A DNA stretch of 64,000 nt from Dicyema japonicum (Eukaryota > Animalia > Dicyemida): the NCBI GenBank assembly GCA_011109175.1, contig RDEW01000013.1, positions 1,184,767-1,248,766 on the forward strand, given 5' to 3'. Position 1 is the first letter of the stretch. The number at the start of each line of letters is the position of its first letter. Positions 1,447 through 53,293 of the stretch are shown piece by piece. The translations under genes and the position numbers were made by a program. The notes under the pieces were generated by a model. That model was not told the origin of the DNA. It searched no databases and was given only the letters and a program-made list of their open reading frames with translations.

Positions 1447-2249
1447 TCAGCTAATGGATAATTTTACTTTCTCAGTTAAAATCGTTATCAATAAATTTTC
1501 TTTATTCATTAAAATATAGAATGAAAATAATTAGTGTAATTGGGAACGAATTAGGCTAGTGCAGGTCAAAGGAAATAATCATCCCTTGGACATCGTTTGC
1601 TACGTCTAATTGTCTTCGATCTGATTTGTTCTAATTCTTTTGTTCTAACAAGTAAAACAAGCCAAATAAAGTATCTTGTCCAATTTACTAAACTGATCCG
1701 TTGATAGTTAAATTAATCCAAAATTATCATTACATCAGGTATAATTTTAAATTATAGACTTTTTGTTCATTATAAAGTTTTCTTTGTTGTTTTGTATTGT
1801 CGTGAAGTACTAAAATTGCATAAAATAACTTTATCATTTAGGATAGATGTGACCTCCAGTTCTATTCGTGTTAAGTCAACAATATTATTCACTCTTAGAT
1901 TTCGTTTGTGTTCAATATGCTCGAGTCAGAAGGTATTCTTTTCTGTTTATCGAGTTTTATGAATTATTATGGTTTTCGGAAACTCTAAAAATAACATTTT
2001 TAGGATTTTTAGAATTCCTGATATTCATAATCTGATATCACAATCATCATATATACAGTAAGATAGCTACTAGTTCTCTTTCCTTTTTTTACTGTAGTGG
2101 TATGTCATATGATCCACATGTTTCATGTTGTGTCCAGTTCAAAGGTGGCTCGAAAAAGGATCATTTATCTCCCACTGAGGTATCACGCAGTCATCACTAT
2201 TCTGGTTCTAATTGTTGAATGTTCCGCACATTTATGATGATTTGGTATT

Positions 2250-3779: not shown

Positions 3780-3916
3780 TTAACTAGTTGATAATTTTAC
3801 TTTCTCGGTTAAAACGTTATCAATAAATTTTCTATATTCATTAAAATATCAGGTTTATAATAGTTAGAAGGTATAAGCAACAAATCAGGCTACAGCTGGC
3901 AAGCGGAAGATCGTTA

Positions 3917-4104
3917 TAAAAAATTAAAATAATTCCAATGACCAAGAGTAACCAAACTAACTAACTCATTGATCCTGACTTGTTCCAGCGTTCCAGAAGT
4001 TGTCTCCAAGAAACAGATAGTCCCCGGGGAAGAATAGTTGGATCCTCTTGATGCCGGACAGGCATTATGCATCTCCTCAGTAAAGTGATCCATTGATGCC
4101 ATCG
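3917..4104 (-). mobile_element. SINE-like family C copy (pseudoknot core plus LINE-derived tail, head absent)
   Basis: Reverse complement aligns to 38063-38290 and 43757-43970. Confidence 0.75.
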
Positions 4105-5503
4105 ACTCCATGAATTTTTTTGGGATTCCATGAATTTTTTCTTGTTTTTCTGCACCTCTCCTTGGCAAATCATATCATAGCGTTTACTGCACTGAACAGA
4201 GACTTAATCGCTAGTGATGTGTCAGATCTAATTAAAATAGATTTCCTAAGAAAAATCTGTTGATGCAATCAACAAATTTGTCCTTGAGTCTCTTGTACCT
4301 ATTAGTCTATTGGGAGTTCCCTTTTAACAATTTCTTAAGGGAAATGTCATCAGTCGGTTAGCAAACTCTTCAGCTTTATCATGCGGACTGAATGCCGAAT
4401 TTTTAGCATTTTGCTGATTTCATTTATTTGGCTCCGAATTTTTTTTAATTTTATTGCCCAAGGATCAATGTGTTAAAAGAGAAAAAATGTCCTCTGCTGA
4501 CTAAGTGATCTCAAATCATTAAGAGATCGCAGATTTGAATGCATAGCTAATCTATTTGCAGGGGGAACATGCTAGAATTATCAACTGCGTTTACTGTCCT
4601 CCCCTTATCAACAACGATTAATTGGTGAGAAGATTATTTCAGTACGTCTACTTTAAGTAATTAAGTTATGTGCGAAAATAATAATATGAACGGTAGGGTT
4701 TGTCAACAGACTTCTACACAGACAGCCTCACAAGAAATCAACAAAATCATGGTTATATTTGAAACTCATGGTTAAGTCTCAAATACTTTAGTTCGGTCTT
4801 TGTAACCTCGAATAAGATTTTCGATAGTTCCACCAACCTTGCAAATTTTTCCTTCCACCACAGAAAAAGGGTACACGAAAATTTACCTCGTAAGCATGCT
4901 TCAGAGCAAATTGCGAGTTTTCTCAGATTTTTTAAAAATTAACTGTCTCCTTTTCGGTTCGTACCGTTGTTCTTAACCGTTGAACATTCAAGGAAATATT
5001 GGGAAGTAGATGATATTAAAAATGGTCTCCTACTCGATTTTAACTTTCTAACTCATAACAGAGCGTTTGTAGCTTTTTTTTTCGTATTTCGGAATGATTC
5101 ATGAAAATACCTCCCTGGTCAATTGAGAGGGCAAGGTATTTCAAAGCCTTCTTCTGAGATATGTTTTGTAACGTGTCTTTATTTAATTAGCCTCCTGCTT
5201 CCATTTATCCTCACCACACTACGCTTCTCATCTGCGACTAAAAGAAAGTTTTCATTACACAAATCTTCGATCAGTTCCATATATTTCTTAAACCGTTGGG
5301 TTTAAAGAGACATGATAAGTTATGACGTCATCAGCGTACATCAAGATTTCTGTACGTGGGTTTTCTTGGGAAGGCAATTTACTCATTACAATGTTAATAG
5401 AAGAGGACTGAGAACTGAATTCCTATCGACACCTCTGTTCAGTCAAATTTCACGAGAATCATATTTTAAAAATTAAAAATTGATTTATTATCCTTATTTT
5501 TTA

Positions 5504-5660
5504 CCACATGGTGCAATGTGGTGTTATAAGGCTAGTTTGTTACATAATATTTTCCTTCCTTTCGATGGCGTCCTTGGAATCATTTTACTGATGAGACGCT
5601 CAATGCCTGGCCGACATCAAGAGGATCCAATTCTTCTTTTCCGGGGAGACAAGTTCTGGA
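5504..5660 (+). mobile_element. SINE-like family C copy, 3' truncated
   Basis: Palindromic head at 5504-5521 and core at 5567-5628, homologous to the other C copies. Confidence 0.7.
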
Positions 5661-5674
5661 ATTAAATTAAATTA

Positions 5675-5988
5675 ATTAACCCCGGATACACCGAGAAAAA
5701 AGTTAAAGTAAACAACTAATTAAGTGTATCCAGTTTCCATTTATACAGAAACAGACTCCATTGGAAATCAGCATAAAACGAATAAGACGTCCATCCTTGC
5801 AGTTGTGGAAACCCCTCAAGTGGAGTGGGGGAGAGCAAATGATCCTTTTTTGTGCCGGCCAGGCACTGGGCGCCACCTGGACAGGTGGATCACATGACGC
5901 CACTCTAATAGAAAGAGAGATGAGAAACAGACAAACAAACATAAAATTTAATCCATTAGGCATGCAGCACCACATGGCGCCACGCGAC
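5675..5988 (-). mobile_element. SINE-like family B copy (~310 bp)
   Basis: High similarity to 41602-41915 and 51945-52260. Ends in gtgtatccgggg followed by (ttaat)-like repeats. Confidence 0.8.
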
Positions 5989-6159
5989 AAAATTTTTTTT
6001 TTCTGGAATAATGGAATGAGTCAGGATAAAGGAGTTAGTTTGTTTGGTCCCTTGATCTTTGAAATAATTTTTATTCAATTAATTTAATTATTCAAAAATA
6101 AAATTTCTTTTCAACAACATTCATTTTTTTAAATAGTTATCCGAAAATTAAATCTCCAA

Positions 6160-10665: not shown

Positions 10666-12315
10666 TTATAGCCCCGCATGTGCAACACTCAAAGAAACAA
10701 TATTTATAGTTAGTCTTTTCCATCTTCCTCTGTCGAATGCGAGTGATCTCAATTCGTCCAGGTCGTCTCCCGTCTTTAGATTTTTTCTCACACGATTTAA
10801 GTCTTTGTTTAGGGCTGTCGGAAGTGTCGATCTAGGTCGTCCGCGGAAGGGTTTTTCGCATCTGTCAAAGTAATCTTCCATCGCTTTGTTAGCGGGTGCG
10901 TCCGGGTTCATTCTTAGTACATGCCCAAATAGCCTCCACCGGGCATCTATCACATCCTTGCTGATGTAAGAACACATACACTTGTTGTAGATACCAGTGG
11001 TTGATATTCTACGTGGCCACTCCATTCCGAGTAAGCTTCTTAGTTGCCTTCTATGGAACGAATCCAGTTTCAATAGTTCTTTGTTGAAGGAACTTCCCCA
11101 TGTCCCAGCGTTATACAGTAGGATCGGTTTCACAAACGCGTTGTAAAGCCTGCATCTGATGTCAATTCCAAGTCCTTTGGCCCTTAGCCATCCTTTCTTC
11201 AGTTTAGCCATTGCCGCATTTGCCAGTGTTTTCCTCCTTAGTACATCTTCAGCGTCTCCTAGTAGAGAGCCGAGCTTATTAGTACGTCTCCATCTTTCAT
11301 GAGTAATATCGTCTTCTCTTTTGATTTCCGTAATTTCAGTTTTGTTAACATTTACGCTGAGAAACCATTTCTCAAGCTCCGCAGGTGCATTTTCTAGCAG
11401 GTGTTGGAGTGCGGTCACATCCCGTGATACAAAATCCACATCATCCGCATAAGATGTCTCTTCTATGTCTCCTATATAGCATTTACGGAGGTCGCGGAGT
11501 GCAGATTCAAGGTATATGGTGAATAGTAAAGGGGAGAGGGAATCACCCTGGGGTGTCCCAATCGTTGTTTTGAAACTGCGGGAAGTTGCTCCTTCTGTCC
11601 TCACAGATAGTCTTGTGTTCGCAAGTAGTAGTCTGATTATCCTAACCGACGATTCATCCAATATTTGCTCAAGCACATTCATCAGTTTCTGTCTGTTTAT
11701 TGAGTCGAAAGCTCTGGAGAGATCTATTCCCAACACGGTTGTTGCGCTCTTGAATCTTTGGTGCGTTGCGCAGCGCCATCTGTGGCTCCATACAATGTCT
11801 GCCGTAGACCTCCCTTCTCGGAACCCACTTTGACTTGCTGGTAGGTATAGATCCGCCACACCCTTTATCCGGCTTAGTGCAATGTTTGCCAGCACCTTGC
11901 GTATCGAATTCAGAAGTATTATCGGGCGGAGATTTTCTACTGGTCCTTTTGATTTGTTCGGTTTTTGTATGGGTATTAATAATCCATTTCCAAGTCCTAG
12001 ATCGGTATTAGTTTCAAAGACGTCATTTAGGGTTTTTGCAATTGTGTCGCTAAGTTTTTTTGGCCCATATTTTAGGAGCTCAGGGCTTATGTTGTCCGGC
12101 CCAGCACTCTTGTTGTTCTTCAGTTTATTTATCGCTAATTCCACCTCTTCCACTGTGATTGGGATTTTTAGCGCCTTTGCTTCTCCCTGGAAAGGGGGAA
12201 AGTCATTATTTTCTTTATTCAACAGTGTTTCGAAGTGTCGTGCAATCAATTCTGCTTTTTCTTCCGGGTTACCCACTTTGTCCTTTCTTTGTCCGCAGCA
12301 GCCGCAAAGCCGCAT
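10666..12315 (-). CDS. RTE reverse transcriptase (RT and thumb region of the single ORF)
   Basis: Motifs KSAGPDNI, RPIILL, QSGFREGRST, IDLSRAFDS, QGDSLSPLLF, YADD, RWRLFGHVLR, RGRP. Confidence 0.93.
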   Translation of the reverse strand: MRLCGCCGQRKDKVGNPEEKAELIARHFETLLNKENNDFPPFQGEAKALKIPITVEEVELAINKLKNNKSAGPDNISPELLKYGPKKLSDTIAKTLNDVFETNTDLGLGNGLLIPIQKPNKSKGPVENLRPIILLNSIRKVLANIALSRIKGVADLYLPASQSGFREGRSTADIVWSHRWRCATHQRFKSATTVLGIDLSRAFDSINRQKLMNVLEQILDESSVRIIRLLLANTRLSVRTEGATSRSFKTTIGTPQGDSLSPLLFTIYLESALRDLRKCYIGDIEETSYADDVDFVSRDVTALQHLLENAPAELEKWFLSVNVNKTEITEIKREDDITHERWRRTNKLGSLLGDAEDVLRRKTLANAAMAKLKKGWLRAKGLGIDIRCRLYNAFVKPILLYNAGTWGSSFNKELLKLDSFHRRQLRSLLGMEWPRRISTTGIYNKCMCSYISKDVIDARWRLFGHVLRMNPDAPANKAMEDYFDRCEKPFRGRPRSTLPTALNKDLNRVRKNLKTGDDLDELRSLAFDRGRWKRLTINIVSLSVAHAGL

Positions 12316-12411
12316 ACATCCTTGAATTGTCTTTTAGGCATTCCACATCTTTTAATAGGGATGTAATAATTTCCCGTGAGTGTTTTCTGTTCATCTTTTT
12401 GATTTTCCACT

Positions 12412-13190
12412 TTAGTTCCCTTTGTTGGATATTAAGCTCTTTTTTTTACTCTCGTCTGACGTGTTTGCCGCTTTTAGTCGTAGCTCTCTGCAATGCTTTG
12501 CCATATTTGGCACGTTCGGGTGGTGATCCAATTTTAGGGCGTGATGATTTCGAACTCCAAGGCATATTTTGGCCGACTTGGAGATTGCCTGTTTTGTTTG
12601 ATCCCACATAGTTCGTACTGATGATTCCGGTGCGGTTTTCACCATAAGAGTCTCGATTTGTTCGTGATATTTAGCTCTACAAGTTTGCTCTAACCACAAT
12701 TTTTCTGTCTGAAAGTATATATTGGGTCTTTGTCTCGCCTTCTTCGCGTTTTCAATGTATTTTTTACCAGTCAGGTGCTTTTTTACACAAAGTTTTGCAA
12801 TGACGATCCTGTGGTCGCTGTCGGTTGTTGTTCCCTGGTAGGAACGTGCATCATTTATCAGGTGTTTATCAGACTTTAGGCAGATAATGTAGTCGATTTG
12901 ATTATATATATTCACGGTCTCTCCGACAGAGTTTTTTCTTTGTCCGTGCCACGTCGTCTTGTGGCAAGCTGAGTGCGTAAATGCCGTGTTGCACAGGAAA
13001 AGGCTATTTGCCTCACAGAAGTTTACCAGAGAGGCTCCAGATGCATTTCTCCTTCCGCGTCCGTGTCTTCCAATAGAGGATTCTTCGGGCCCCATTCGCA
13101 TTCCGGCCTTTGCATTCATATCTCCCGCAACAAAGACAAGAGGCGAGGAAGCATTGTTAGAGTATGTGCTTGATAGTTCTGAGTAGAATT
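12412..13190 (-). CDS. RTE AP-endonuclease region, separated from the RT by frameshifts
   Basis: Motifs EEFYSEL..VAGDMNAK, LCNTAF, IYNQIDYII, DSDHRIV. Frameshifts near 13190, at the A8 run near 12442, and near 12285. Confidence 0.85.
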
Positions 13191-36097: not shown

Positions 36098-39000
36098 ATG
36101 ACCGAAACAGCAAATGAGAAACTCCAACTATGCTTAACTACAGATGAGTACAATTGTCTTTCTCATTCTATTAAAAAGCAAGCTTACTAATCTAGTGGAT
36201 TCTAAACTACAAGAAATAGGAAAATTTAGGAACACGTTCCTTAAGAAATTCATTGAACAAAAGGTAAATTCAACTTAACATGAAAGAACAAAATTCTTTA
36301 GAGGAGGATTTCACAACACTTGAGCAGAGATTTGACTCAGGATTCTATAAGACTTGGAAAGTCAACAATTTTAGTTAATTTTCAGAGGAGGTTAAGGAAA
36401 TCTGCAAAAACGCAAAAATTGACCTTGGAAAAGTATGAGTTGCTAGGAAAACTGGAAATAGCTGAAAGTGAGGGAATATCTTCAAAGTTAGTAATTTTAC
36501 TCATAAAGTACCTATTTGAACGGTACGAGACTGAGACGACAAGCCTTAGAAGTCAAGTTGAATATCTGCAGACTGAATTGCATAAAATGAACAGTGAGGT
36601 GTTGTCCTCTAGGCAGCAGTACGTAGTTCTTTGTATTACTGTAGAATGTCAACTCCATGCACGTGAAGATTGAACTGGACGAACAGAAAAACCTTAGTCA
36701 TTAGTTTTTGTTTTAATAATTTGGTTAGCATTGTTAGAGTCATGTTTGTAAGAGTTTTGACTATTTCTTCCAAGAATCTGACTGAGGTGGGTTTACCTAT
36801 GACTGTAGATTTACGATGAATATTTTAATATTAATGAAGCTTTAATGAGAGAAAGAAGTGAGAATATTTGCATGACAGAGTCTGTGTTGATACTTAGCAG
36901 GTTTGTGCTTTAATTCCCTCTTTTACCGAGCTGTTAATTAACCCTTTAGTCTTGTTATTGACACAAATAATCATAGTAACTCAATCTTGCAGGGCTACTG
37001 TAAGGTTGGAGGACGCTTTTCCCTTTTGATTTGTAAGAAATTCCTCAATGAGCCACCTCCTTTATCGCTCATACCCATTCCCTTACCTTTTATTAGCCCA
37101 AATTTTTTGTCACTTTGTTGTTAATTTTTTATATCATTTTGATGAATTGCACTTCGTATTTCTTTTTCTTATATAAGCTTATTCTGCTTTTACTTGATTT
37201 CCTTAGTTTTATAAATTTAAATCTGTTGATAGTTTACTTATGTCTCCCATTGAAGTACTCATCTTCTAATTTCTTAGCGATTTTTTATACTAACTTCTTA
37301 GTCTTACTTTAGTTTTATGTGCTTTATTGCTTATTGAATTCTTTTCCACCTCAAAGTTAATTTGTAGGAAGCTGAGGACAAGGCACTGAGTATTATGAAA
37401 TTAAAGAGCATAATTAAAGACTACTGCAATCCATGAATGAGACTCAAAGAATATGGAATGTTACTTCAAGATATTCTTCTCCAATTCCATCAATTATAGC
37501 GAGTAAAGGCTAATGCTGATAAAGTGACTCAAAAGATCGACAAACTGAAGGCTGAACGTTGACAACTTAAATATCAAAGCAACAATTTGTCACTCCAAGT
37601 GCAAATTCTTTTCAAACAAATTCACGAATTACGTGGAGGGGAAGTCGTTGAGACATTGACCATTCGGAACTGGTCATAGATTATGTGGAACATTGGTCAA
37701 ATTAATGTTTGAATGATTTTTATTCAAGAATGATCGAGGAATTACAAACCTGAAATCTTCAGTTGCTGTTTACTGTGAGAAGGTATATGAGTGAGGAACA
37801 GGGGGGAAACCGAGAAATATGAAGAAATGCTAAACGAGAGCAGACTGAGGATTGAAGACCTAACCAAATCTAATGAGGAGTTATCCTCACTTAGAGTCCG
37901 GGACTCTGACTTGGTATTTCAGTGATTTTTACTTAAGTTTGATGTGATTTCTTAACAACTTGATCTCTTCCACTCAATGCTTTCAAAATCTAAAAGTGTT
38001 CAAAATATGGACTTTTCCGTTCACTCAGTGAACGAGATTGTTAAAAACACGTTCCTTTCAATTCGGCGCCATGTGGCTAGTTGGTCATAAATTATTTTGT
38101 TTCCGATGGCGTCATTGGATATACCTTGCTGAGGAGACGCCCAATGCCTGGCCGGCATCAAGATAAGCGAATTATTCTCCCCCGGTGGACAATGTCGTTA
38201 TCTGGAGACAAGTTCTGGAACCCTGGAGCGAGTCAGAATCTAAGAGTTAGTTTGGCTACCATTGGTCTTTGGAATAATTTTAATTTTTTTTAATTTTACA
38301 AGAAAAAGTTGACAGATTGCGAAGTATAAACATGGATTTTACGCAAAGTAACGGAGATCTGTCCTCTTGAGTATTATTCTACTATTAAAATAACTTGAAT
38401 TTTACATTGAGATTAGCCACTATAGAAAACGACATAAACTTGTACCAGGCCAATATCGAAGTACTAAGGAGACAATGAAGACAAACGAACACAGAATGTA
38501 TTGCTAAAAGAAAAAATAGGAAATTGTACCGGGTTTTTTTGCTTTATTAATATTGAAAGACATTGGTGATGTAAGAAAGCAGTTTTATGAAAGCAAATTG
38601 TCGGTAATTTCTGTCAAAATCGAAAAAGACGGCCTTATCAGTGAAAATAATAGACTTTTGTCGAAAAATTGTGCTCTCAGATCAAAACAGAGGGTCTTTA
38701 GTTCCATTGCCAACGATATTCTGGCTAGTCCGCTGTGGAAAAGTAACTGTTATAAACAAGCAGAATTGATTCTGATGATCGTATGTTTGTAGAAAAGCGA
38801 GTCCAAGACCTTTCCTTTGCCTTGATTGAATCGAAGAATCTCCTATCTAAAATTGACCGGGAAAACACAAAAGGCCATGGTGGTGTTTGGTCTTTATTCC
38901 ATACAAGGACAGAGGAGCTTGAAAATCAACTAGCAGGGGTAGGAAAGTATTTTAAAGAAACAAGTCAACTATGATTTCCTACCAGAGTGAAGTTTCTGTT

Positions 39001-39397: not shown

Positions 39398-39500
39398 CCA
39401 CGTGGTGCCGTGTGGCTACTTGATTAAAGATTTTTGTTTCTTTTGTTCCTTCAGTTTTAGTAGAGTCATGTGATTTACCAGTCATAGGTGTCGCCCAGTA
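39398..39500 (+). mobile_element. Degenerate 5' part of family B
   Basis: Palindrome ccacgtggtgccgtgtgg and a decayed core (gagtcatgtgatttacc..gtcgcccagt). Confidence 0.45.
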
Positions 39501-40090
39501 AACTTCCAATATTTCAAATGGAGTACAATTGGACTCTTCTAAGTATTCAAAATATCTCATTGATGAGTACCAATAGAACTCCTTTTTTTGTCCAGACAGA
39601 AAATTCAATTATAAATTGAGAAATCTTTCTTAGATTTTTTTAAACTGATTGGTTATAAAATTTTAACAAAATCTGTGACAAAAAATCTTTAATAATTATA
39701 ACGCTAAATATTAATGCTCCGAATATATTCCTAAAATAATATCCTTGCGCAGTGACGGTACCATAGTCAATGATAGTTTACTGAGGCGTGGTTAAAGATA
39801 AATGAAAACTGCAACCAATTACCGCATGTTTTTGCTTTGCTGGACAATCCAATTTCTGTAAAATAAAAAAAAAACATACTTCATATTTCATTAACATATA
39901 TTACGATTAAAGGAAATCATTGTATAGCAATCCCTAATTGTCCTTAGCCTAATCTTTGGTCAAATTGATTATCAAAAAGTTCGACGGGAGCATCAATCGA
40001 CCATTATTATATTGGTGTAGACCGATGATATACGTCATAAAAGTTACCGGCATGAATCTAATCTGTAAACTCAGAAAATATAGCAACAAC

Positions 40091-41247: not shown

Positions 41248-41601
41248 AGCAACAATCTTTTCAGACAAACTTTGATCGTTCGAAGCTTCAATAGAATCAA
41301 TCATTAAGTTGCACAAAGCATTGCAGATGGTATTATAGATAGTGACAATAATCTGGATAAATGTTTTCCCTTTCAAAATTACTCAAAAAATACATTAAAT
41401 AATTAACCAACCTAGTATTCTAAACAAGAGGTCGAATTTTCTTGAATTTTGTTAGATTTCCAATAACATTAAAAACTGGTAATAAAATACAATTATTTCC
41501 TTAAATTTTTCAAAAAAAATCTTGAATCAATCAATCCCGTAAAATTCGACAAAGTAACACTTTTGAGGTTAATTATCTATCACAAAGAAGAAATCAATTA
41601 A

Positions 41602-41915
41602 GCCGCGCGGCGTCATGTGGTGCTGCGTGGTTAATTGGTTGAAGTTTTTTTGCTTGCTTGTCTGTTTCTCCTCTCTCTTCCTATTAGAGTGGCGTCATGT
41701 AATCCACCTGTCTATGTGACGCCCAGTGCCAGGCCGGCACGAAAAAGGATCATTTGCTCTTCCCCACTCAACTGGAGGGTTTCCACAACTGCATGTAATG
41801 GACGTCTTACCTTTTGTGCTGATTCCACATGGACTCTGTTTCTGTAGAAGTGGAAACTGGATACACTTAATTAGTTGTCTACTTTAACTTCTTTCTCGGT
41901 GTATCCGGGGTTATT
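41602..41915 (+). mobile_element. SINE-like family B copy
   Basis: Palindromic head at 41603-20, core at 41691-41751, LINE-like tail. Confidence 0.8.
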
Positions 41916-42349
41916 AAATTAAATCACAAAAATAAAACAAAGTTATAAGAAGATACCACATAATTCTCCAAGAAAAATTACAAAATGAATCATATATCGA
42001 TTCTGTTGGCTTTTTAGGCAATTTTTTTCCTTCGTAAGTTAATTGGATGCGTTGGAAGGCTTATTCGTATACTCGTTCCTGTTGCACGAAATGTCTACTT
42101 AGGTGAACCCCTTTGATGAAACTCCTTGTTTTTCGTCTCGGAAGCATGGATGAGGTGATGGACCAATTAGTCATTGGTGACCAGCAGTTCTGAACAAATG
42201 AAGTGTAGGTATTGAAGTTCAAATTCCCCTGCACAAAACTGAAAGATCTCAGAAGATCATCTGTCAAATTCTGCACGTGTATGCTAGTTAATACGACTCT
42301 AATAAAGAACTTTTTATTCTCAACGATCATTTAACTAATTATTTCTTAC

Positions 42350-43379
42350 TTATCGCCCATACCTTTTCGGTACATCGTCTTCAGTCTCCTCTTCAGTCTC
42401 ATAAGAATAGTCATCATCGTCCTCATTGTCAACATTAGAAGTATATTTGACTTTGTTGGAATAGAAGAGGTCATGGTTTTGTCCGCCACTTCACTCCGTT
42501 TATCAAATGGGGAATTACGAGCGGATCCACTATTTCCATAAAGCGCATTTTCAAAAATCTAAATTTGAGAACGAAAAAACTCTGAAATCATGTTTTGGAT
42601 CGACAATCTTTAAATTATTGTAGCAGTTCGACAAATAATCCAAAATGCTAGTGCTGTGAGCCAATTCTATCATTATAAAGTTTTTTCAAAATTTCCTAAA
42701 ATAGTAAATTCTAAGGCCAACCTGCAAGTCGCCAATTTTCTTTTTCCTCAAAGTCCAGCAATGTTCGATGAATTTTCGCGGAGGAACTTGAAGATTTCAT
42801 CTTTACTTCTCGCAGCTTTCGTTCGTACTAAAATAAAGTCGATCAATACTTTGTCTGTGTCTCCGTATTGAATCGTATTTTCAGTCACCTGATCGGCGAG
42901 TTTTCGTTCTTTATTTTTGTTTTTCAAATCTTTGTTGATTTGCGACTAAAATCTTTATAAAGCTTGATTACCTTCACTACACTCAAAATCCCCTTATATT
43001 TCTGTAACGGATCCACTACCTTTGACTGCATTCTCTCTGCCTATGGATTAGATCCTTCAATGAACCTGAGTTGTTCTGTAATCTTGAATTGAAGCTAAGT
43101 TTTCGGCGAATTTTTCATAGGCAGCTTTTTCGGAGGGATTGGAAGCTTCTCCGTTCGAATAGGCGATTAGCTCGCTTACAATTTCGTCACCTTAAAGATA
43201 ATTTTTATTATTGCCTCGATTCCTTAATTTCGTTAGCTTTTCAGTGTAAACACTAAGAGAAGTACATAATCTCCCAAAATGATTTTCTATTGCAGTGATT
43301 CGTCTCTTGGCGAATTTATTTAATATTTCTCTGCGAACGTTTACATCTAATTTAACCCTTCAATAGTATCTCTGTCCAT
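42350..43379 (-). CDS. CIBAR1: FAM92/CIBAR BAR-domain ciliary protein; 8 exons with 22-26-nt introns; three single-base homopolymer indels
   Basis: Spliced product includes IENHFGRLCTSLSVYTEKLTKLRNRGDEIV, FAENLASIQDYR, KVVDPLQKY, FEEKKIGDLQ, FIMIEL and IFENALY, with an acidic C-terminus, matching FAM92A. Introns: 43356-31, 43214-191 (GC-AG), 43065-41, 42971-46, 42849-28, 42721-696, 42580-59. Confidence 0.88.
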
Positions 43380-43479
43380 CTCTAAGACCGTTACTTGGAA
43401 ACAAAATTTATCATTTATTTTAATAATTTATTTATTTAAATATCATTTATTTTAATTATCATTTATTTTATTTTCAGAT

Positions 43480-43755
43480 CGCGTCATGTGTTGTTATGTC
43501 CTTATCTTTCCATATCTTGGACAAATATGAGGAAAATTGAGGAAATGCAAAAGAGGGCTTACAGAGTAACCCCTTATGAGATTTGACTCCAGATCACGGG
43601 AAATTGGCCCTGAAAATTCAGGCAGCCGTCCTGTACGTTCATGCGTGGGCACGAAGGAAAAACGACGGGCAAAGATGAGGTCTTTGTTAAAATGCATCGG
43701 GATCACGTGATAATTAGTTTTGTTTTACCGTGGTCTTGGGTTAAATAAAAAAATA
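43480..43755 (+). mobile_element. Element with a B/C-like head remnant, a different middle and an I-like LINE 3' end
   Basis: Starts gcgtcatgtgttgttatg and ends gggatcacgtgataattagttttg..gggttaaataaa. Confidence 0.5.
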
Positions 43756-43756
43756 A

Positions 43757-43970
43757 ATGTGGCTAGTAGGTCATAAATTATTTTCCTTCTGATGGCGTCA
43801 TTGGATCCACCTTACTGAGGAGACCCTAATGCCTGGTCGGCATCAAGAGGATCCAACAATTCTTCCCCGGGGACAACGTCGTTACCTGGTGACAAATTTT
43901 GAAATGCTGGAACGGTCAGGATCGAGGAGTTAGATAGTTTGGTTACCTTTGGTATTTGAAAATAATTTAA
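43757..43970 (+). mobile_element. SINE-like family C copy
   Basis: Core at 43794-43854; tail homologous to the other C copies. Confidence 0.78.
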
Positions 43971-44089
43971 TTTTAGTACTATTCAGGTGGAAAACAATTA
44001 ATCTTTTAATCTGCCACAAAATAAATAAGAAGCTATTAATTTTTACTAGAATAGGAGATTTTTTCCCTGGAAAGATATTTAAAAAAGGA

Positions 44090-47139: not shown

Positions 47140-47235
47140 TTCCTTACAGTTGTGGGAGCTCCTCCAGTTAAGTGGGGAGAGCAAATGATCCTTTTTGCGA
47201 GCCATGACACCTAAGACAGGAGGATCAGATGACAC
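47140..47235 (-). mobile_element. Partial family B copy
   Basis: ccagttaagtggggagagcaaatgatccttttt matches the B middle and core. Confidence 0.6.
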
Positions 47236-49394
47236 TATTATATAAGAAAAGGGAAATGAAAATTATTTACGTTAAATATCTATTTTCACACTTTATTTTT
47301 AAAGAAGCAACATTAAAAATATTATATTTAATATTAATTTTGACATTTTTGAAAATTTCTAAGTATAGACCGTCAGTGCTTTATCGAATTACACAAAGTG
47401 GTGCTACAATCAATCCTATGTCGTCTTTGACTTAAAGTTTTACATCATTGTGAGAATATAATTGTAATGATTCTCTGATATTTTAGTTTAACGTCTCTTA
47501 ATTTCAGTATTTGGACTCATTATATCCGTACGGCAGCATTTTATAGCGCTGTTAGGGTATTGGCGATTTTTGATATTTCAGCTTGACAATGTCGTGGAAA
47601 GATATTTTGTGAGGAAAATTAAGAATTACAAGACAAATCCCACGCAACTTTTTTATGTCTTCTTCGTTTTAGCTTAAGGTGGTAATTTCTCTAGAGATTA
47701 TAAATACAAATTTAGAACGCAGCAAACGAAGAGGCTTTAAATTTATTCTCTTCACCTAACTTTACACTTTGGAAATTTAATAACTCCCGATTCCTGACGT
47801 CTTCTGAGTCTGTCACCCTTCCTATGAAAGGGTTTTCGCCATAAGTGTAAATTTTGTACAATTGAGAGATTTTTATCGCAGATTGTGTATCGATGGGCCA
47901 TACCAAATTTTTCTGAAATTCGCGTATGCGTCAGCATAGTCGATATTTCGTGGCATCTTCGACATTACTAAGACTTTTGACATCTATAAAAATTCTTAGC
48001 GGTAGAGAAGTTACTAAAAATTTTGGCTCTGATTTTAATTCCCCACTCTTCACAAAGGGCGTTTCGCCGCATAATCAATCCACCTTGTCGTATTAAAATT
48101 GGAAGGAGTTTGAAAGCATCAAATTAATTCACTATTCAGAAAGTTCATGAAAAATTATCAGCCCAAGAATTTCATAGCCCCAATGCCAAGTGGAGAGATT
48201 AAACCAAAGGTTTTTCGAGATGGAGGTTAGAGGTATTTAATTTTTAGGATTAAGGGCAAAGAACAGAAATTAGCATAATATTAGAAGAGTTTGCCATTAT
48301 GTGATCATCCCCATAGCTTTTTCTTCCAGAACCCTACGTGGTCTCTCTATATTCTTATATTACAGACAAATGCTCTTGTAGACAAAATGAATCCACGTTT
48401 TCCTAAAAAGTTCTCGAAGGTTGTTGAATCCGTCACCGATCAGAAAACCTCCGTAGAAATTTAGTGGTTGTGCGTTGAAAGTCTTTGACTTTCTTTAGAT
48501 TCATTTTTACCTGTCGGTTGCTTCAATCTATTGGTCGTATAAATATAGCATGAGTCTGAATAATTTCTTGTATTTTTCAAGGTCTTAAGTTCATTTTTTG
48601 TCGTGACTCTGCTGGCTACTCGAGCGAGAGGGAATAGCCATACGGTTTGATCTTCCTAACTTAATTAATCGGATAGGCCATTTTGTTTCGCTGTAATCGA
48701 GGCTTCTTAGCGAGGCCATACGAGAAAGATCAGTTACTTGCTGCTTATTGCTCCGGTCGTCTCAGCAGGAATCGTGCGGAAGGTATATCGGTCTAAGAGT
48801 CATCTGTATATCTTTTCTTTATCTCTTTCTGCTTTCTCTGTAGCGGAAAGTGACAGAGTCAATAGTGATGTGCTTTATCATCCCACGGTATGATGTTTGA
48901 TTTGTTCCGCGTTTCTTAAAAGGTATATTTGTTTAAATAAAACGTAGATTTCATGAACTACTCCTTCAAATAAAAGAGTTTGTTAAAGACCACAAAAATC
49001 ATGCTTTGTTGAACAGTAAAGAGTGGATTACCGATTTAGTTTTTTGGATCGATCTATCCTCTCAATTATCCTCGTTAACACACTCTTAACACACTTTCAA
49101 TGATCTTGGTGGAGGAGATGGAATCGACACATTGCATCTCAAAATAACCATTACCCTTCCTCGAACAGAAAGATTGTTGGGTAGGACCGCGTATTTTTTC
49201 CGTTTCATCTTCTCGGCCTTCTCAGCGGCAAAACAGGCTCCACTCTGTAGTAGGTTGCAAGAGGCAAACGTGTCGGTGCAGGCAACGTCCCAGACAAGAG
49301 GTTTCCTGCTTCAAAAAAGAAGATTTTCATCCCATCTGGTCGTTTCCCGTCCCGCCTAAAGAGAGTGTAGAATCCTTTTTGACATAGGAGTTAC

Positions 49395-51488: not shown

Positions 51489-51944
51489 AGGAGTTACAGG
51501 CCACTAGCGATGATTGGTATGAAGGGAAAGAAACGTCCACAAAAATCCGAACTCCAATTCCTCCGAGTCTCACTGGCAGCGTGGCTTGATTCCATGAGTA
51601 ATCCTCGAACCGGACGTTAAAGATACGTTTTGCTGTTGTACGGAAGATCTCGTTAATCTGTGCGAGTTGGTCACACTAGGTGAAATGAAACATGACAAAG
51701 CTTTTGAATACTTCTATTCTGAAAGTCATCAATTGTAGATTTTGCATTTAGTGTAATTTATTTCCAGTCCAGCATCCAACAGTGCAAGAATTATCATTTC
51801 CAAATTCCGGAAAATAGTATCCGGGGGTCCTCCGAGGACCGCATCATCCAGATAAATTGAGGGGCAAGCGCGTAAGTTTGCTGATTTTTTCTATTGCAAG
51901 ACATTTTCTAATTGTTTTTATTTTTTGACAATTTATTTTTAATG

Positions 51945-52260
51945 TTAACCCCGGATACACCGAAAAAGAAGTTAAAGTAAACAACTAATTAAGTGTATCC
52001 AGTTTCCACTTCTACAGAAACAGACTCTATCCGGAATCAGCACAAAAGGTAAGACGTCCATTACATGCAGTTGTGGAAACCCCTCCAGTGGAGTGGGGAA
52101 GAGCAAATGATCCTTTTTCGTGCCGGCCTGGCACTGGGCATCACCTAGACAAATGGATCACATGACGCCACTCTATTAGGAAGAGAAAGGATGGAACAGA
52201 CAAGCAAGCAAAAAACTTCAACCAATTAACCACGCAGCACCACATGGCGCCACGCGGCCA
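51945..52260 (-). mobile_element. SINE-like family B copy
   Basis: Near full-length match to 41602-41915. Confidence 0.8.
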
Positions 52261-53293
52261 CAACACTTTTAGGATTAATAGTAAAGAACAGAAATTAGCA
52301 TAATATTAGGAGATTTAATAATAAAACATATTCTGCATTTCTGATATGCACATTGGTCTCCTACAAGTTAGTGAGGCTGGGGTACTTAACTAACATTAAA
52401 CAGATAATTTAAATGTCAAAAATTGACATTTAAAAGTCGAGAGGTAACACTTATGTTACAATGACGGGACTATGTCGACAAACTTTTTCATCTCAATATC
52501 ATTCAACCACAAGTCGATATATAACATTAATCTTCCTTAATCTCATTAATGCCACAGTAATGACTATAAATGTCGCAACCTAGGTCAATGTTATGAATGA
52601 TCTCGTCTTTGATACTATTCTTGAAATGTAATAATAATCGAATTGATCGACAAATTTTTTTGAATAAAAGAAATCAAGAGCCATCGTGTCATTTTAGGTT
52701 CGCCTACACAGTCTCGTTCCGTTCAATTAACCTGATAAACTCTGATATGATCTGTTAATTAAAAGGAAAATCAATAAAGTCAAATTAACAAATCGTTCAA
52801 ACAGCCAAGAGACAATGACCCACTCAATGGGCTGTCGAAACCACAACGACTAAGATAGTCGTCTAACCATACCATGATAGCGTTTTTGACCCTGACAGTA
52901 ACACTTTATTATATTGCCTAAACTACAACAGTAATTATCGTTACTATGGAAACACAGTCATTAAATAAAAGGATTTAAAACGGAATTTTAAACGGAATTA
53001 TAAAAGGATTTTAAACGGAAAATGGAATTATAATTAAATTAGTCATTCATTAAAGGACGAATAACGTATCTAGTTGTGACTCGATTTATTTATCTAAGAT
53101 CACCTAGGGAGAAAGGTATCTAAGCCAATTAGATAAGTGATCCCAGTTTCTACTAACTCAAGACTCAATCAATATATTTTTGAAAACAAGATTTCAACCA
53201 ATTTATTTATTTAACAAAAAATATTTATGTAAAATAATTTAAATTTATTTAATATTTTTACAAATATAATTTGAATAAAATAAATTTAGTGCT

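What the first reader, a model, noticed from the sequence alone, without database searches (positions are those of the whole stretch)
4040..4100. Candidate HDV/CPEB3-like ribozyme as the core of SINE family C
Seen in 4 copies: 4100-4040 (minus), 5567-5628, 38108-38163 and 43794-43854. Consensus: GGCGUC-auu-GGAUCC-ACC-UURCUGA-GGA-GACGCC-YA-AUGCC-UGGCC-GGCAU-CAAGA-GGAUCC. The helix order P1, P2, P3, L3, P1', P4, J4/2, P2' is that of HDV-like ribozymes. L3 is 7 nt with U at position 1 and G at position 6, as in CPEB3, and a C directly follows P4 (catalytic C75 position). A P1.1-like pairing appears to covary: L3 UG with CA in 38108, and L3 UA with UA in 4100 and probably 43794. P1 shows G-C to A-U compensation in the 4100 copy, which begins only ~4 nt upstream of the predicted cleavage site. 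Deviations: 6-bp P1, A.A at the base of P3, non C-G P1.1, 5-nt J4/2. Known: HDV-like ribozymes occur at the 5' ends of R2, RTE and ingi/L1Tc elements. Activity here is inference.
Basis: partly seen in the sequence, partly recalled or inferred. Interest (0 to 1): 0.85.

Follow-up and report, generated by a model that had tools for sequence, protein, structure and literature searches.

The report
HDV-ribozyme-shaped pseudoknot inside abundant SINEs
A 62-nt RNA module shared by very abundant short retroposons folds in the same helix order as hepatitis-delta-type self-cleaving ribozymes, and the fold is real, but nothing here shows that it cuts itself, and sister families lack the would-be catalytic bases.

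Summary
The four family-C copies are at the stated coordinates. A sister family D (3 full copies) and 3 decayed relatives in the window share the same core. Read/contig depth suggests hundreds (C) to thousands (D) of genomic copies.

The fold is supported. The C and D consensus differ at 7 of 42 helix positions and no pair breaks (p about 2e-4). This includes double changes in the P2 pseudoknot helix and in P4.

Family C also shows several HDV-type hallmarks: U at -1, G1 paired to C, L3 with U1 and G6, and a C right after P4.

Evidence against an active ribozyme:
- L3 and J4/2, the would-be active site, are the most divergent segments between families. The base after P4 is C in C, G or A in D, and U in a third family.
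- All four C copies in the window carry at least one helix defect.
- No Rfam ribozyme model matches, even at E<=10.
- Two D insertions bounded by target-site duplications include about 100 nt upstream of the predicted cut site, so their template RNAs were uncut.
- No RNA-end data were available.

Verdict: this is a real HDV-topology structured module, probably related to retrotransposon HDV-like ribozymes. I put catalysis in family C at about 0.3.

At least seven first-reader notes report the same motif on other pieces of this genome. None had been followed up.

The parts
4039..4100 (-). Family C core copy, in an element truncated about 5 nt upstream of G1 (element about 3914-4105)
   Evidence: P1 has a G1.A mismatch plus one G-C to A-U double change. 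The P2 5' strand has a 1-nt deletion. P4 is intact.
5567..5629 (+). Family C core copy. The element is 5530-5661 plus 6001-6075, split by a family D insertion.
   Evidence: P1 starts with G1.U. There are mismatches in P2, P3, P4 and P1.1.
38108..38170 (+). Family C core copy (element about 38071-38290)
   Evidence: P1, P4 and P1.1 (UG/CA) are intact. The P2 3' strand is destroyed (4 of 7 pairs lost).
43794..43855 (+). Family C core copy (element about 43757-43975)
   Evidence: P2, P4 and P1.1 are intact. P1' has a 1-nt deletion, and the pile-up restores the G after 43824.
41691..41753 (+). Family D core copy (element about 41602-41922, candidate TSD ATCACAAA at 41579-41586 and 41923-41930)
   Evidence: The pile-up consensus (41701 A>G, 41715 T>G) restores P2 and P3.
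5839..5901 (-). Family D core copy. This is a full-length D element (5662-5988) inserted into the C copy, with TSD ATTCCAGAA.
   Evidence: All helices are paired. It was the best descriptor score in the window (48).
52107..52169 (-). Family D core copy (element about 51938-52262)
   Evidence: Its helix changes are all wobble-preserving (G.U in P1, two U.G in P3).
52225..52260 (-). Family D head: a stable hairpin of about 15 bp, roughly 55 nt upstream of the core
   Evidence: present in both the MFE and the centroid structure. The same head is at 41602-41640(+) and 5988-5950(-).
2096..2166 (+). Decayed relative of the core (P2 and P3 kept, P4 broken)
47183..47240 (-). Decayed relative with an internal deletion of P1' and P4
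39398..39500 (+). Head plus the 5' half of a core, truncated inside P4

Best explanation
The 62-63-nt core is a conserved, structured RNA module with the nested double-pseudoknot architecture of HDV-like ribozymes: P1 of 6 bp, P2 of 6-7 bp, P3 of 3 bp, P1.1 of 2 bp and a P4 hairpin. It sits inside at least three very abundant LINE-dependent SINE families, about 45-100 nt downstream of a conserved 5' head. It most likely descends from, or is a sister of, the HDV-like ribozyme modules that non-LTR retrotransposons carry near their 5' ends. Inferred: what selection keeps across these SINE families is the fold, for example as a 5' RNA module recognised by the partner LINE machinery or stabilising the RNA. 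It is not self-cleavage, because helices covary while the would-be active-site loops drift, and because the retroposed RNAs were uncut. Family C alone keeps a near-canonical set of catalytic-type bases and may still cleave slowly 5' of G1. That is unproven.
For: - Copies and families.
- Abundance: summed contig depth over the D core is about 2.9 million and over the C core about 0.38 million, against 696 in the unique flank.
- Fold: per-copy helix status.
- C versus D consensus: 7 substitutions in 42 helix columns with zero broken pairs, p=2.4e-4. This includes U-A to G.U and G-C to U-A in P2, A-U to G-C in P4, and A.A to A-U in P3.
- Tool count on P1/P3/P1.1/P4: 91.9% of cells paired against 31-48% when partners are slid, and covariation score 0.247 against 0.173 (0 of 500 shuffles reach it).
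- P1 and P2 are each worth about -8 kcal/mol. The two nested alternatives are isoenergetic (-14.5 and -14.4), as expected if both helices form as a pseudoknot.
- Wobble pairs fit the sense strand only.
- Loops drift: L3 is UUACUGA in C and UGUCUA in D; J4/2 is CAAGA in C and GAAAAA in D. A third family has U after P4 (loose-end consensus).
- Uncut templates: TSDs lie about 100 nt upstream of G1 in two D insertions.
Against: - Only 7 full and 3 partial copies could be read. The covariation rests essentially on one split between two families.
- A strict helix-order descriptor gives about 1 chance hit per simulated 64-kb window (maximum score 45, against 48 real and about 47 for the consensus). 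Topology alone is therefore only modestly beyond chance.
- A non-catalytic role has no direct evidence.
- The LINE partner's 5' UTR was not in the window, so descent from a LINE ribozyme is inferred from first-reader notes and from known biology.
- Family C matches so many HDV hallmarks that real catalysis remains a serious alternative.
Confidence: 0.5

Rival explanations
1. One reading: the family C consensus is a working HDV-like self-cleaving ribozyme. It cuts 5' of G1 of GGCGUC and uses the C directly after P4 as general acid. The sister families would be degenerate or variant versions.
For: - All helices have family-typical lengths (P1 6 bp, P2 6-7 bp, J1/2 2-3 nt; compare PMC4908430).
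- U is at -1 in all copies, the preferred base per PMC1874588.
- G1 pairs with a pyrimidine. L3 has U1 and G6 (the reverse-wobble positions). C plus purines start J4/2 (descriptor in PMC6326823).
- Weak U:A-type P1.1 helices occur in fast natural ribozymes (PMC13635239).
- 11 of 12 RNAs designed only to fit the HDV descriptor were active (PMC6326823).
- Retrotransposon 5' regions and their short derivatives often carry such ribozymes (PMC3185411, PMC4035085, PMC3414825).
Against: - No Rfam HDV/CPEB3/drz model matches at E<=10.
- The consensus P3 has an A.A mismatch. L3 position 5 is U, not C. J4/2 is 5 nt with G at the fourth place instead of CRRA.
- The majority P1.1 is probably U-A plus A.C.
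- The catalytic-type bases are not shared by families D and X.
- The module is internal. Copies keep upstream sequence, and the 4100 copy still has 5 nt of it.
- No loose-end cluster at G1 appears among the best-supported ones.
- Well-folding SIDER1 candidates were inactive in trypanosomes (PMC4035085).
Confidence: 0.3
2. The conserved core acts at the DNA level, for example as part of an internal promoter (a B-box-like GGATCCAA paired with the A-box-like TGGCTAGTTGG in the head). The RNA pairings would then be incidental.
For: The family C head contains an A-box-like motif and the core ends in a weak B-box-like motif (read). Pr77 of L1Tc is both a promoter and a ribozyme (PMC3383444).
Against: - The B-box-like motif is not kept in family D.
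- ARAGORN finds no tRNA-like gene.
- A DNA-binding site does not predict compensatory double changes 47 nt apart, or changes that preserve G.U pairs on one strand only.
Confidence: 0.1
3. Chance: two GC-rich hairpins (P1, P4) plus a repeated GGATCC happen to fall in HDV order in an abundant repeat.
For: Loose HDV-order descriptors hit 274 times in this window. Strict ones hit about once per simulated window.
Against: Helix preservation across families with p about 2e-4. The real scores lie above all 60 simulations. Hallmark bases co-occur in family C.
Confidence: 0.05

Closest known systems
L1Tc/NARTc/ingi/SIDER Pr77 HDV-like ribozymes of trypanosomatids (PMC3185411, PMC4035085, PMC3383444)
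   Same: An HDV-type double pseudoknot shared by a LINE clade and its short non-autonomous derivatives. It has weak 1-2 bp P1.1 helices. Some copies fold well yet are inactive. Duplicated 5' signatures exist (SIDER2).
   Different: There, G1 is nucleotide +1 of the element and cleavage was shown in vitro. Here the module lies 45-100 nt inside the element, behind a head, and cleavage is untested. There is no sequence similarity.
R2 and R2-SIDE 5' HDV-like ribozymes of insects (PMC3414825)
   Same: A non-autonomous element that keeps both the LINE 5' structured RNA and the 3' end. From my own knowledge, not checked here: the R2 5' pseudoknot also serves as a protein-binding RNA.
   Different: R2 ribozymes define the exact 5' end from a 28S co-transcript. 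The elements here are dispersed, have TSDs far upstream of the module, and number in the thousands.
CPEB3 ribozyme, and the C. briggsae / Ackermannviridae HDV ribozymes (PMC4836649, PMC13635239)
   Same: Compact size of about 60-70 nt. L3 is 7 nt with U1 and G6. P1.1 is non-G:C or incomplete. A C follows P4.
   Different: These have an intact 3-bp P3, C at L3 position 5 and a 4-nt CNRA-type J4/2, and cleavage is demonstrated. No Rfam model of this group matches the core.
Twister-variant ribozymes at the 5' end of Perere-3 in Schistosoma mansoni (PMC8501958)
   Same: A self-cleaving-ribozyme-type fold associated with non-LTR retroposition in a parasitic spiralian.
   Different: It is a different ribozyme class. 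There, TSDs abut the cleavage site, which is the genomic footprint of cleavage before retroposition. That footprint is absent here.

Membership tests
HDV-like self-cleaving ribozymes | Nested double-pseudoknot helix order P1, P2, P3, P3', P1', P4, P4', P2' with coaxial-stack-compatible junctions | tested here: met
   Segmentation of 7 copies. Helices are kept between the C and D consensus, p=2.4e-4. Pair counts. There are no bases between P3' and P1'.
HDV-like self-cleaving ribozymes | P1 of 6-7 bp starting with G1 paired to a pyrimidine, a short J1/2, and P2 of about 7 bp (PMC4908430, PMC6326823) | tested here: met
   In both consensus sequences P1 is 6 bp (G1-C), J1/2 is 2-3 nt and P2 is 6-7 bp. 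Among the four C copies, P1 is intact in two only.
HDV-like self-cleaving ribozymes | P3 of 3 bp closing L3, with conserved U(1), C(5), G(6) in L3; U1.G6 is a reverse wobble (PMC6326823, PMC13635239) | tested here: inconclusive
   Family C has P3 as A.A plus two C-G pairs, and L3 UUACUGA: U1 yes, position 5 is U not C, G6 yes. Family D has a full 3-bp P3, but its L3 is 6 nt and lacks both the leading unpaired U and the G.
HDV-like self-cleaving ribozymes | P1.1: two pairs between L3 positions 2-3 and the two bases after P1' | tested here: inconclusive
   U-A is invariant in 7 of 7 copies. The second pair is G-C in 4, A-U in 2 and a mismatch in 1. The family C pile-up has C at 74-92%, with A apparently dominant opposite it. 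Non-canonical second pairs are tolerated in natural ribozymes (PMC13635239).
HDV-like self-cleaving ribozymes | Catalytic cytosine opening J4/2 (a CRRA-type junction) | tested here: inconclusive
   Family C has C directly after P4, but the junction is CAAGA (5 nt, G at the fourth place). Family D has G or A after P4, and its nearest C is in the covarying closing pair of P4. A third family has U. The feature is met only in family C.
HDV-like self-cleaving ribozymes | Site-specific self-scission 5' of G1, giving 2',3'-cyclic phosphate and 5'-OH ends | not testable with these tools
   Only assembled contigs of public runs were available. No read ends were reported (table 6: none).
HDV-like self-cleaving ribozymes | Match to a curated family model (Rfam HDV, CPEB3, drz and related models) | tested here: not met
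   cmscan at E<=10 on four regions covering C and D copies gave no ribozyme family. The whole window at gathering threshold gave only U4. These models are sequence-specific, so this is weak evidence.
Retrotransposon 5'-processing ribozymes (R2, RTE, L1Tc, Perere-3 type) | The cleavage site coincides with the 5' end of inserted copies, with TSDs next to it | tested here: not met
   The D insertion at 5662-5988 has TSD ATTCCAGAA lying 99 nt upstream of G1. D at 41691 has a candidate TSD 104 nt upstream. Three of four C copies carry a conserved head of 37 nt or more, and the fourth keeps 5 nt upstream.
SINE / LINE-dependent non-autonomous retroposon | Short, non-coding, very high copy number, TSDs, a LINE-type A/T-rich repeat tail | tested here: met
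   Elements of 230-330 nt. Depth is 500-4000 times the unique flank. TSDs. Tails are of TTAAA/ATTTA type. An internal Pol III promoter is not established: there is only an A-box-like motif, and ARAGORN finds nothing.
Hammerhead ribozyme | CUGANGA and GAAA boxes around three helices | tested here: not met
   CUGAGGA lies in L3/P3' (CUGAUGA in the 5567 copy only). There is no stem II hairpin followed by GAAA, and no Rfam hammerhead hit.

The most novel reading that the evidence does not exclude
An HDV-type double pseudoknot has been co-opted as a non-catalytic 5' RNA module, or as a ribozyme variant that works without the canonical cytosine (G, A or U at that place). It is kept by selection in thousands of copies across a SINE superfamily and its LINE partner in a highly reduced parasite genome. 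Family C would be the last member that still has the catalytic bases.
Probability: 0.15. Interest if true: 0.8.

Novelty: new variant of a known kind. Interest (0 to 1): 0.5.

Why it matters
HDV-like ribozymes are known at the 5' ends of several LINE clades and their short derivatives. No paper found in the searches run here describes one embedded behind a 5' head in a SINE superfamily, and none has been reported for this kind of genome (tiny introns, about half repeats). If family C cleaves, it adds a compact new natural HDV-like ribozyme with an A.A-containing P3 and a weak P1.1. If the fold is conserved without catalysis, it would be a natural case of a ribozyme scaffold kept for another job. 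That bears on how LINE proteins recognise the 5' ends of their RNAs, and on how often 'ribozyme-shaped' motifs found by structure searches are really enzymes.

Tried and rejected
- **Rfam.** cmscan at the gathering threshold on the whole window found only U4. Scans at E<=10 on four sub-regions gave no ribozyme, SRP, tRNA or snRNA match to core or head.
- **Metagenome scan.** A 23-nt degenerate core pattern gave 34 hits. All but a few lie in one conserved bacterial protein-coding gene, and none carries the rest of the core. Dead end.
- **More of the genome via proteins.** Homologs of the LINE RT ORF reach only 48-56% identity and none comes from this genome. No further loci could be fetched, so no large alignment or R-scape-type test was possible.
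- **RNA-end evidence.** No RNA read run was served, only assembled contigs. One run (X5) is spliced RNA but has no ends.
- **Hammerhead reading of CUGAGGAG/CUGAUGAG.** Rejected, because there is no GAAA box or stem II/III arrangement.
- **tRNA-like head.** ARAGORN finds nothing.
- **Loose topology descriptor.** It gives 274 hits per window and is uninformative.
- **CpG-decay explanation of the P1 double change.** CpG o/e is 0.91, so CpG is not hypermutable here. The double change sits in one decayed copy and is not significant either way.
- **Distal head GGCGCC acting as P1.** This would put the cut near the element's 5' end. It is unlikely because in family D the head is locked in its own 15-bp hairpin and starts 7-9 nt inside the element.
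- **The count of structure pairs for P2.** MAFFT did not place the 1-nt J4/2 length difference, so P2 could not be counted with that tool. It was counted by script instead.

Full report
**Observation**

- A 21-nt core pattern with up to 3 mismatches hits exactly these four sites, against 0.00 expected. A 16-nt P1/P2 pattern also hits exactly these four, against 0.43 expected.
- They belong to a SINE-like element of about 230 nt that ends in an A/T-rich repeat tail.
- An nhmmer profile of the core found more. A second family, here called D (about 325 nt), has full copies with G1 at 41691(+), 5901(-) and 52169(-).
- Decayed or truncated relatives lie at 2096-2166(+), 47183-47240(-) and 39398-39500(+).
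- The window is eukaryotic: a U4 snRNA gene lies at 39741-39870.

**Abundance and consensus**

I laid assembled contigs of four public runs on 41500-44000.
- Summed depth was about 2.9 million over the D core and about 0.38 million over the C core, against 696 in the unique flank (run X4). The tool warns that this is not a copy number. The order of magnitude is hundreds of copies for C and thousands for D.
- The pile-up corrects private mutations of the window copies towards better pairing. In D, 41701 A>G restores a P2 pair and 41715 T>G restores P3. In C, a G inserted after 43824 restores GACGCC, and 43837 T>C restores the P4 loop.
- The first base of J1/4 (43827) is C in 74-92% of the depth that covers it.
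- Contigs whose alignment stops at 43824 continue with a consensus in which P4 (AUGCC...GGCAU) is followed by U and then A-rich sequence. This points to a third family, here called X, with U rather than C after P4.
- Run X5 lacks a 22-nt stretch at about 42559, so it is spliced RNA. It is contigs only, so no molecule ends are available (table 6: none).

**Is the fold real?**

I cut each copy into the HDV-type segments. All four family C copies have at least one helix defect, as expected for old, neutrally decaying retroposon copies:

| Copy | Defects |
|---|---|
| 4100 | G1.A mismatch and a deletion in P2 |
| 5567 | Mismatches in P2, P3, P4 and P1.1 |
| 38108 | P2 3' strand destroyed |
| 43794 | Deletion in P1' |

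The D copies are nearly intact.

The informative comparison is between the two family consensus sequences, built from the window copies plus the corrections.
- They differ at 7 of 42 helix positions, yet no pair is broken in D.
- P2 changes U-A to G.U and G-C to U-A. These are two double changes about 47 nt apart, across the P1 strand.
- P4 changes A-U to G-C, and the A.A at the base of P3 becomes A-U.
- Random placement of 7 substitutions gives as few broken pairs in only 2.4e-4 of 200,000 trials. One caveat: the seventh P2 pair was added by me after seeing both families.

The pair-count tool on P1, P3, P1.1 and P4 gives 91.9% paired cells, against 31-48% when partners are slid. Its covariation score is 0.247 against 0.173, reached by 0 of 500 shuffles.

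Energetically, P1 and P2 are each worth about -8 kcal/mol. The two mutually exclusive nested folds of the C consensus are isoenergetic at -14.5 and -14.4 kcal/mol. That is what one expects if both helices form together as a pseudoknot.

Wobble pairs in the D copies fit the sense strand only.

I conclude that the structured RNA, including the P1/P2 pseudoknot, is supported. The data set is small and rests mostly on one family split.

**How special is the topology?**

- A loose HDV-order descriptor hits 274 places in the window and is meaningless.
- A strict one requires perfect P1 (6 bp), P2 (5 bp) and P4 (4 bp) with GC-weighted minimum scores, and P3 with at most one mismatch. It hits only D copies in the real window, best score 48.
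- Sixty Markov-simulated windows gave 0.98 hits on average and a maximum score of 45.
- The C consensus would score about 47.

The helix order alone is therefore only modestly beyond chance at genome scale. The argument rests on conservation and compensation.

**Is it an HDV-like ribozyme?**

I compared the motif with published family features: PMC6326823 (descriptor: G1-Y, P1.1, L3 U..CG, J4/2 CRRA), PMC4908430 (P1 of 6-7 bp, P2 of about 7 bp, short J1/2) and PMC13635239 (weak P1.1 tolerated, L3 G important).

Features the family C consensus meets:
- the helix order;
- P1 of 6 bp with G1-C;
- U at -1, the preferred base per PMC1874588;
- J1/2 of 2-3 nt and P2 of 6-7 bp;
- L3 of 7 nt with U1 and G6;
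- P1.1 formed with L3 positions 2-3;
- a C directly after P4.

Where it deviates:
- P3 contains an A.A mismatch.
- L3 position 5 is U, not C.
- J4/2 is CAAGA (5 nt, G at the fourth place) instead of CRRA.
- The majority P1.1 is probably U-A plus A.C.

Family D deviates at the catalytic core. Its L3 is 6 nt and lacks both the leading unpaired U and the G. The base after P4 is G or A. The nearest C is the 3' member of the P4 closing pair, which covaries (G-C in D, A-U in C and X) and therefore looks paired rather than free. Family X has U after P4.

Between families the helices are conserved or compensated, while L3 and J4/2 are the most divergent segments. A conserved enzyme would show the opposite pattern.

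No Rfam ribozyme model matches any copy at E<=10. This is weak evidence, since those models are sequence-specific.

**Position in the element**

In known retrotransposon ribozymes the cut site is the 5' end of the element, and TSDs can abut it (PMC3185411, PMC8501958). Here the module is internal.
- Three of the four C copies carry a conserved head (GGCGCCATGTGGCTA...) of 37 nt or more upstream. The fourth keeps 5 nt of upstream homology, so it was not cut at G1 either.
- In family D the head is a stable 15-bp hairpin followed by a U-rich linker.
- The D element at 5662-5988(-) is inserted into the C copy at 5567. The C element resumes at 6001-6075. The 9-bp TSD ATTCCAGAA lies 99 nt upstream of G1.
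- The D copy at 41691 has a candidate 8-bp TSD 104 nt upstream of G1.
- The RNAs that were retroposed were therefore uncut.
- No loose-end cluster at G1 is among the best-supported ones in the pile-up. This is weak evidence, because the list is truncated.

**Interpretation**

- Most likely (about 0.5): a conserved HDV-topology RNA module, probably descended from LINE 5' HDV-like ribozymes, whose conserved role in these SINEs is structural. As an inference, it could be a 5' module recognised by the partner LINE machinery, as is known for the R2 5' RNA. That last point is from my own knowledge and was not checked here.
Fold plus hallmark bases is often sufficient: 11 of 12 designed RNAs were active in PMC6326823. 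Against that, well-folding SIDER1 candidates were inactive (PMC4035085).
- A DNA-level promoter reading (about 0.1) and chance (about 0.05) are disfavoured by the compensatory and strand-specific changes.

**Context**

- GC is 33.9% and CpG o/e is 0.91.
- A 22-nt intron, heavy repeat load, and public runs from 2017 and 2019 are compatible with the dicyemid genome described in PMC6736024. This identification is an inference and was not verified. That paper does not describe SINE families or ribozymes.
- At least seven unchecked first-reader notes report the same HDV-like pseudoknot in SINEs and a LINE 5' UTR on other pieces of this genome. I could not test the LINE claim, because no LINE 5' UTR with the core lies in this window.

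Noticed in passing
window 5654-6009: Nested retroposition: a full-length family D element (5662-5988, minus strand) sits inside the family C copy, which resumes at 6001-6075. The TSD is ATTCCAGAA. Thirteen extra bases (A9T4) lie between the TSD and the conserved element start. The D copy at 41602 likewise has 15 extra bases after its candidate TSD. Source transcripts may therefore start about 13-15 nt upstream of the conserved element.
   Followed up: partly
window 52225-52260 (-), 41602-41640 (+), 5950-5988 (-): The family D head folds into a very stable hairpin of about 15 bp (GGCCGCGUGGCGCC / GGUGCUGCGUGGUU). Its first half resembles the P1-J1/2 part of the core (GGCGCCAUGUGG versus GGCGUCAUGUGA). 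There is no Rfam match.
   Followed up: partly
window 39741-39870 (+): U4 spliceosomal snRNA gene (Rfam 59.7 bits, E 8.6e-11). A head plus half-core SINE fragment lies about 240 nt upstream of it.
   Followed up: no
window 43516-43767: Another very high-copy repeat with an A-rich tail lies directly upstream of the C copy at 43794. Summed contig depth is 0.5-1.2 million against 696 in the unique flank.
   Followed up: no
window 42424-43431: An expressed gene. The RNA contig of run X5 covers it and lacks a 22-nt stretch at about 42559, which is a micro-intron.
   Followed up: no
window 10666-13119 (-): A LINE reverse-transcriptase ORF (RVT_1, E 7e-33). Its best database relatives are only 48-56% identical (Octopus sinensis, Elysia, oomycetes). 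No protein from this genome itself is in the searched collection.
   Followed up: partly
window 4105-4150 (-): A tandem duplication of about 19 nt (AAAAAATTCATGGA...) immediately upstream of the 5'-truncated C copy.
   Followed up: no
whole window: GC is 33.9% and CpG observed/expected is 0.91 (GpC 0.95). There is no CpG depletion, which suggests little or no CpG methylation-driven decay in this genome.
   Followed up: yes
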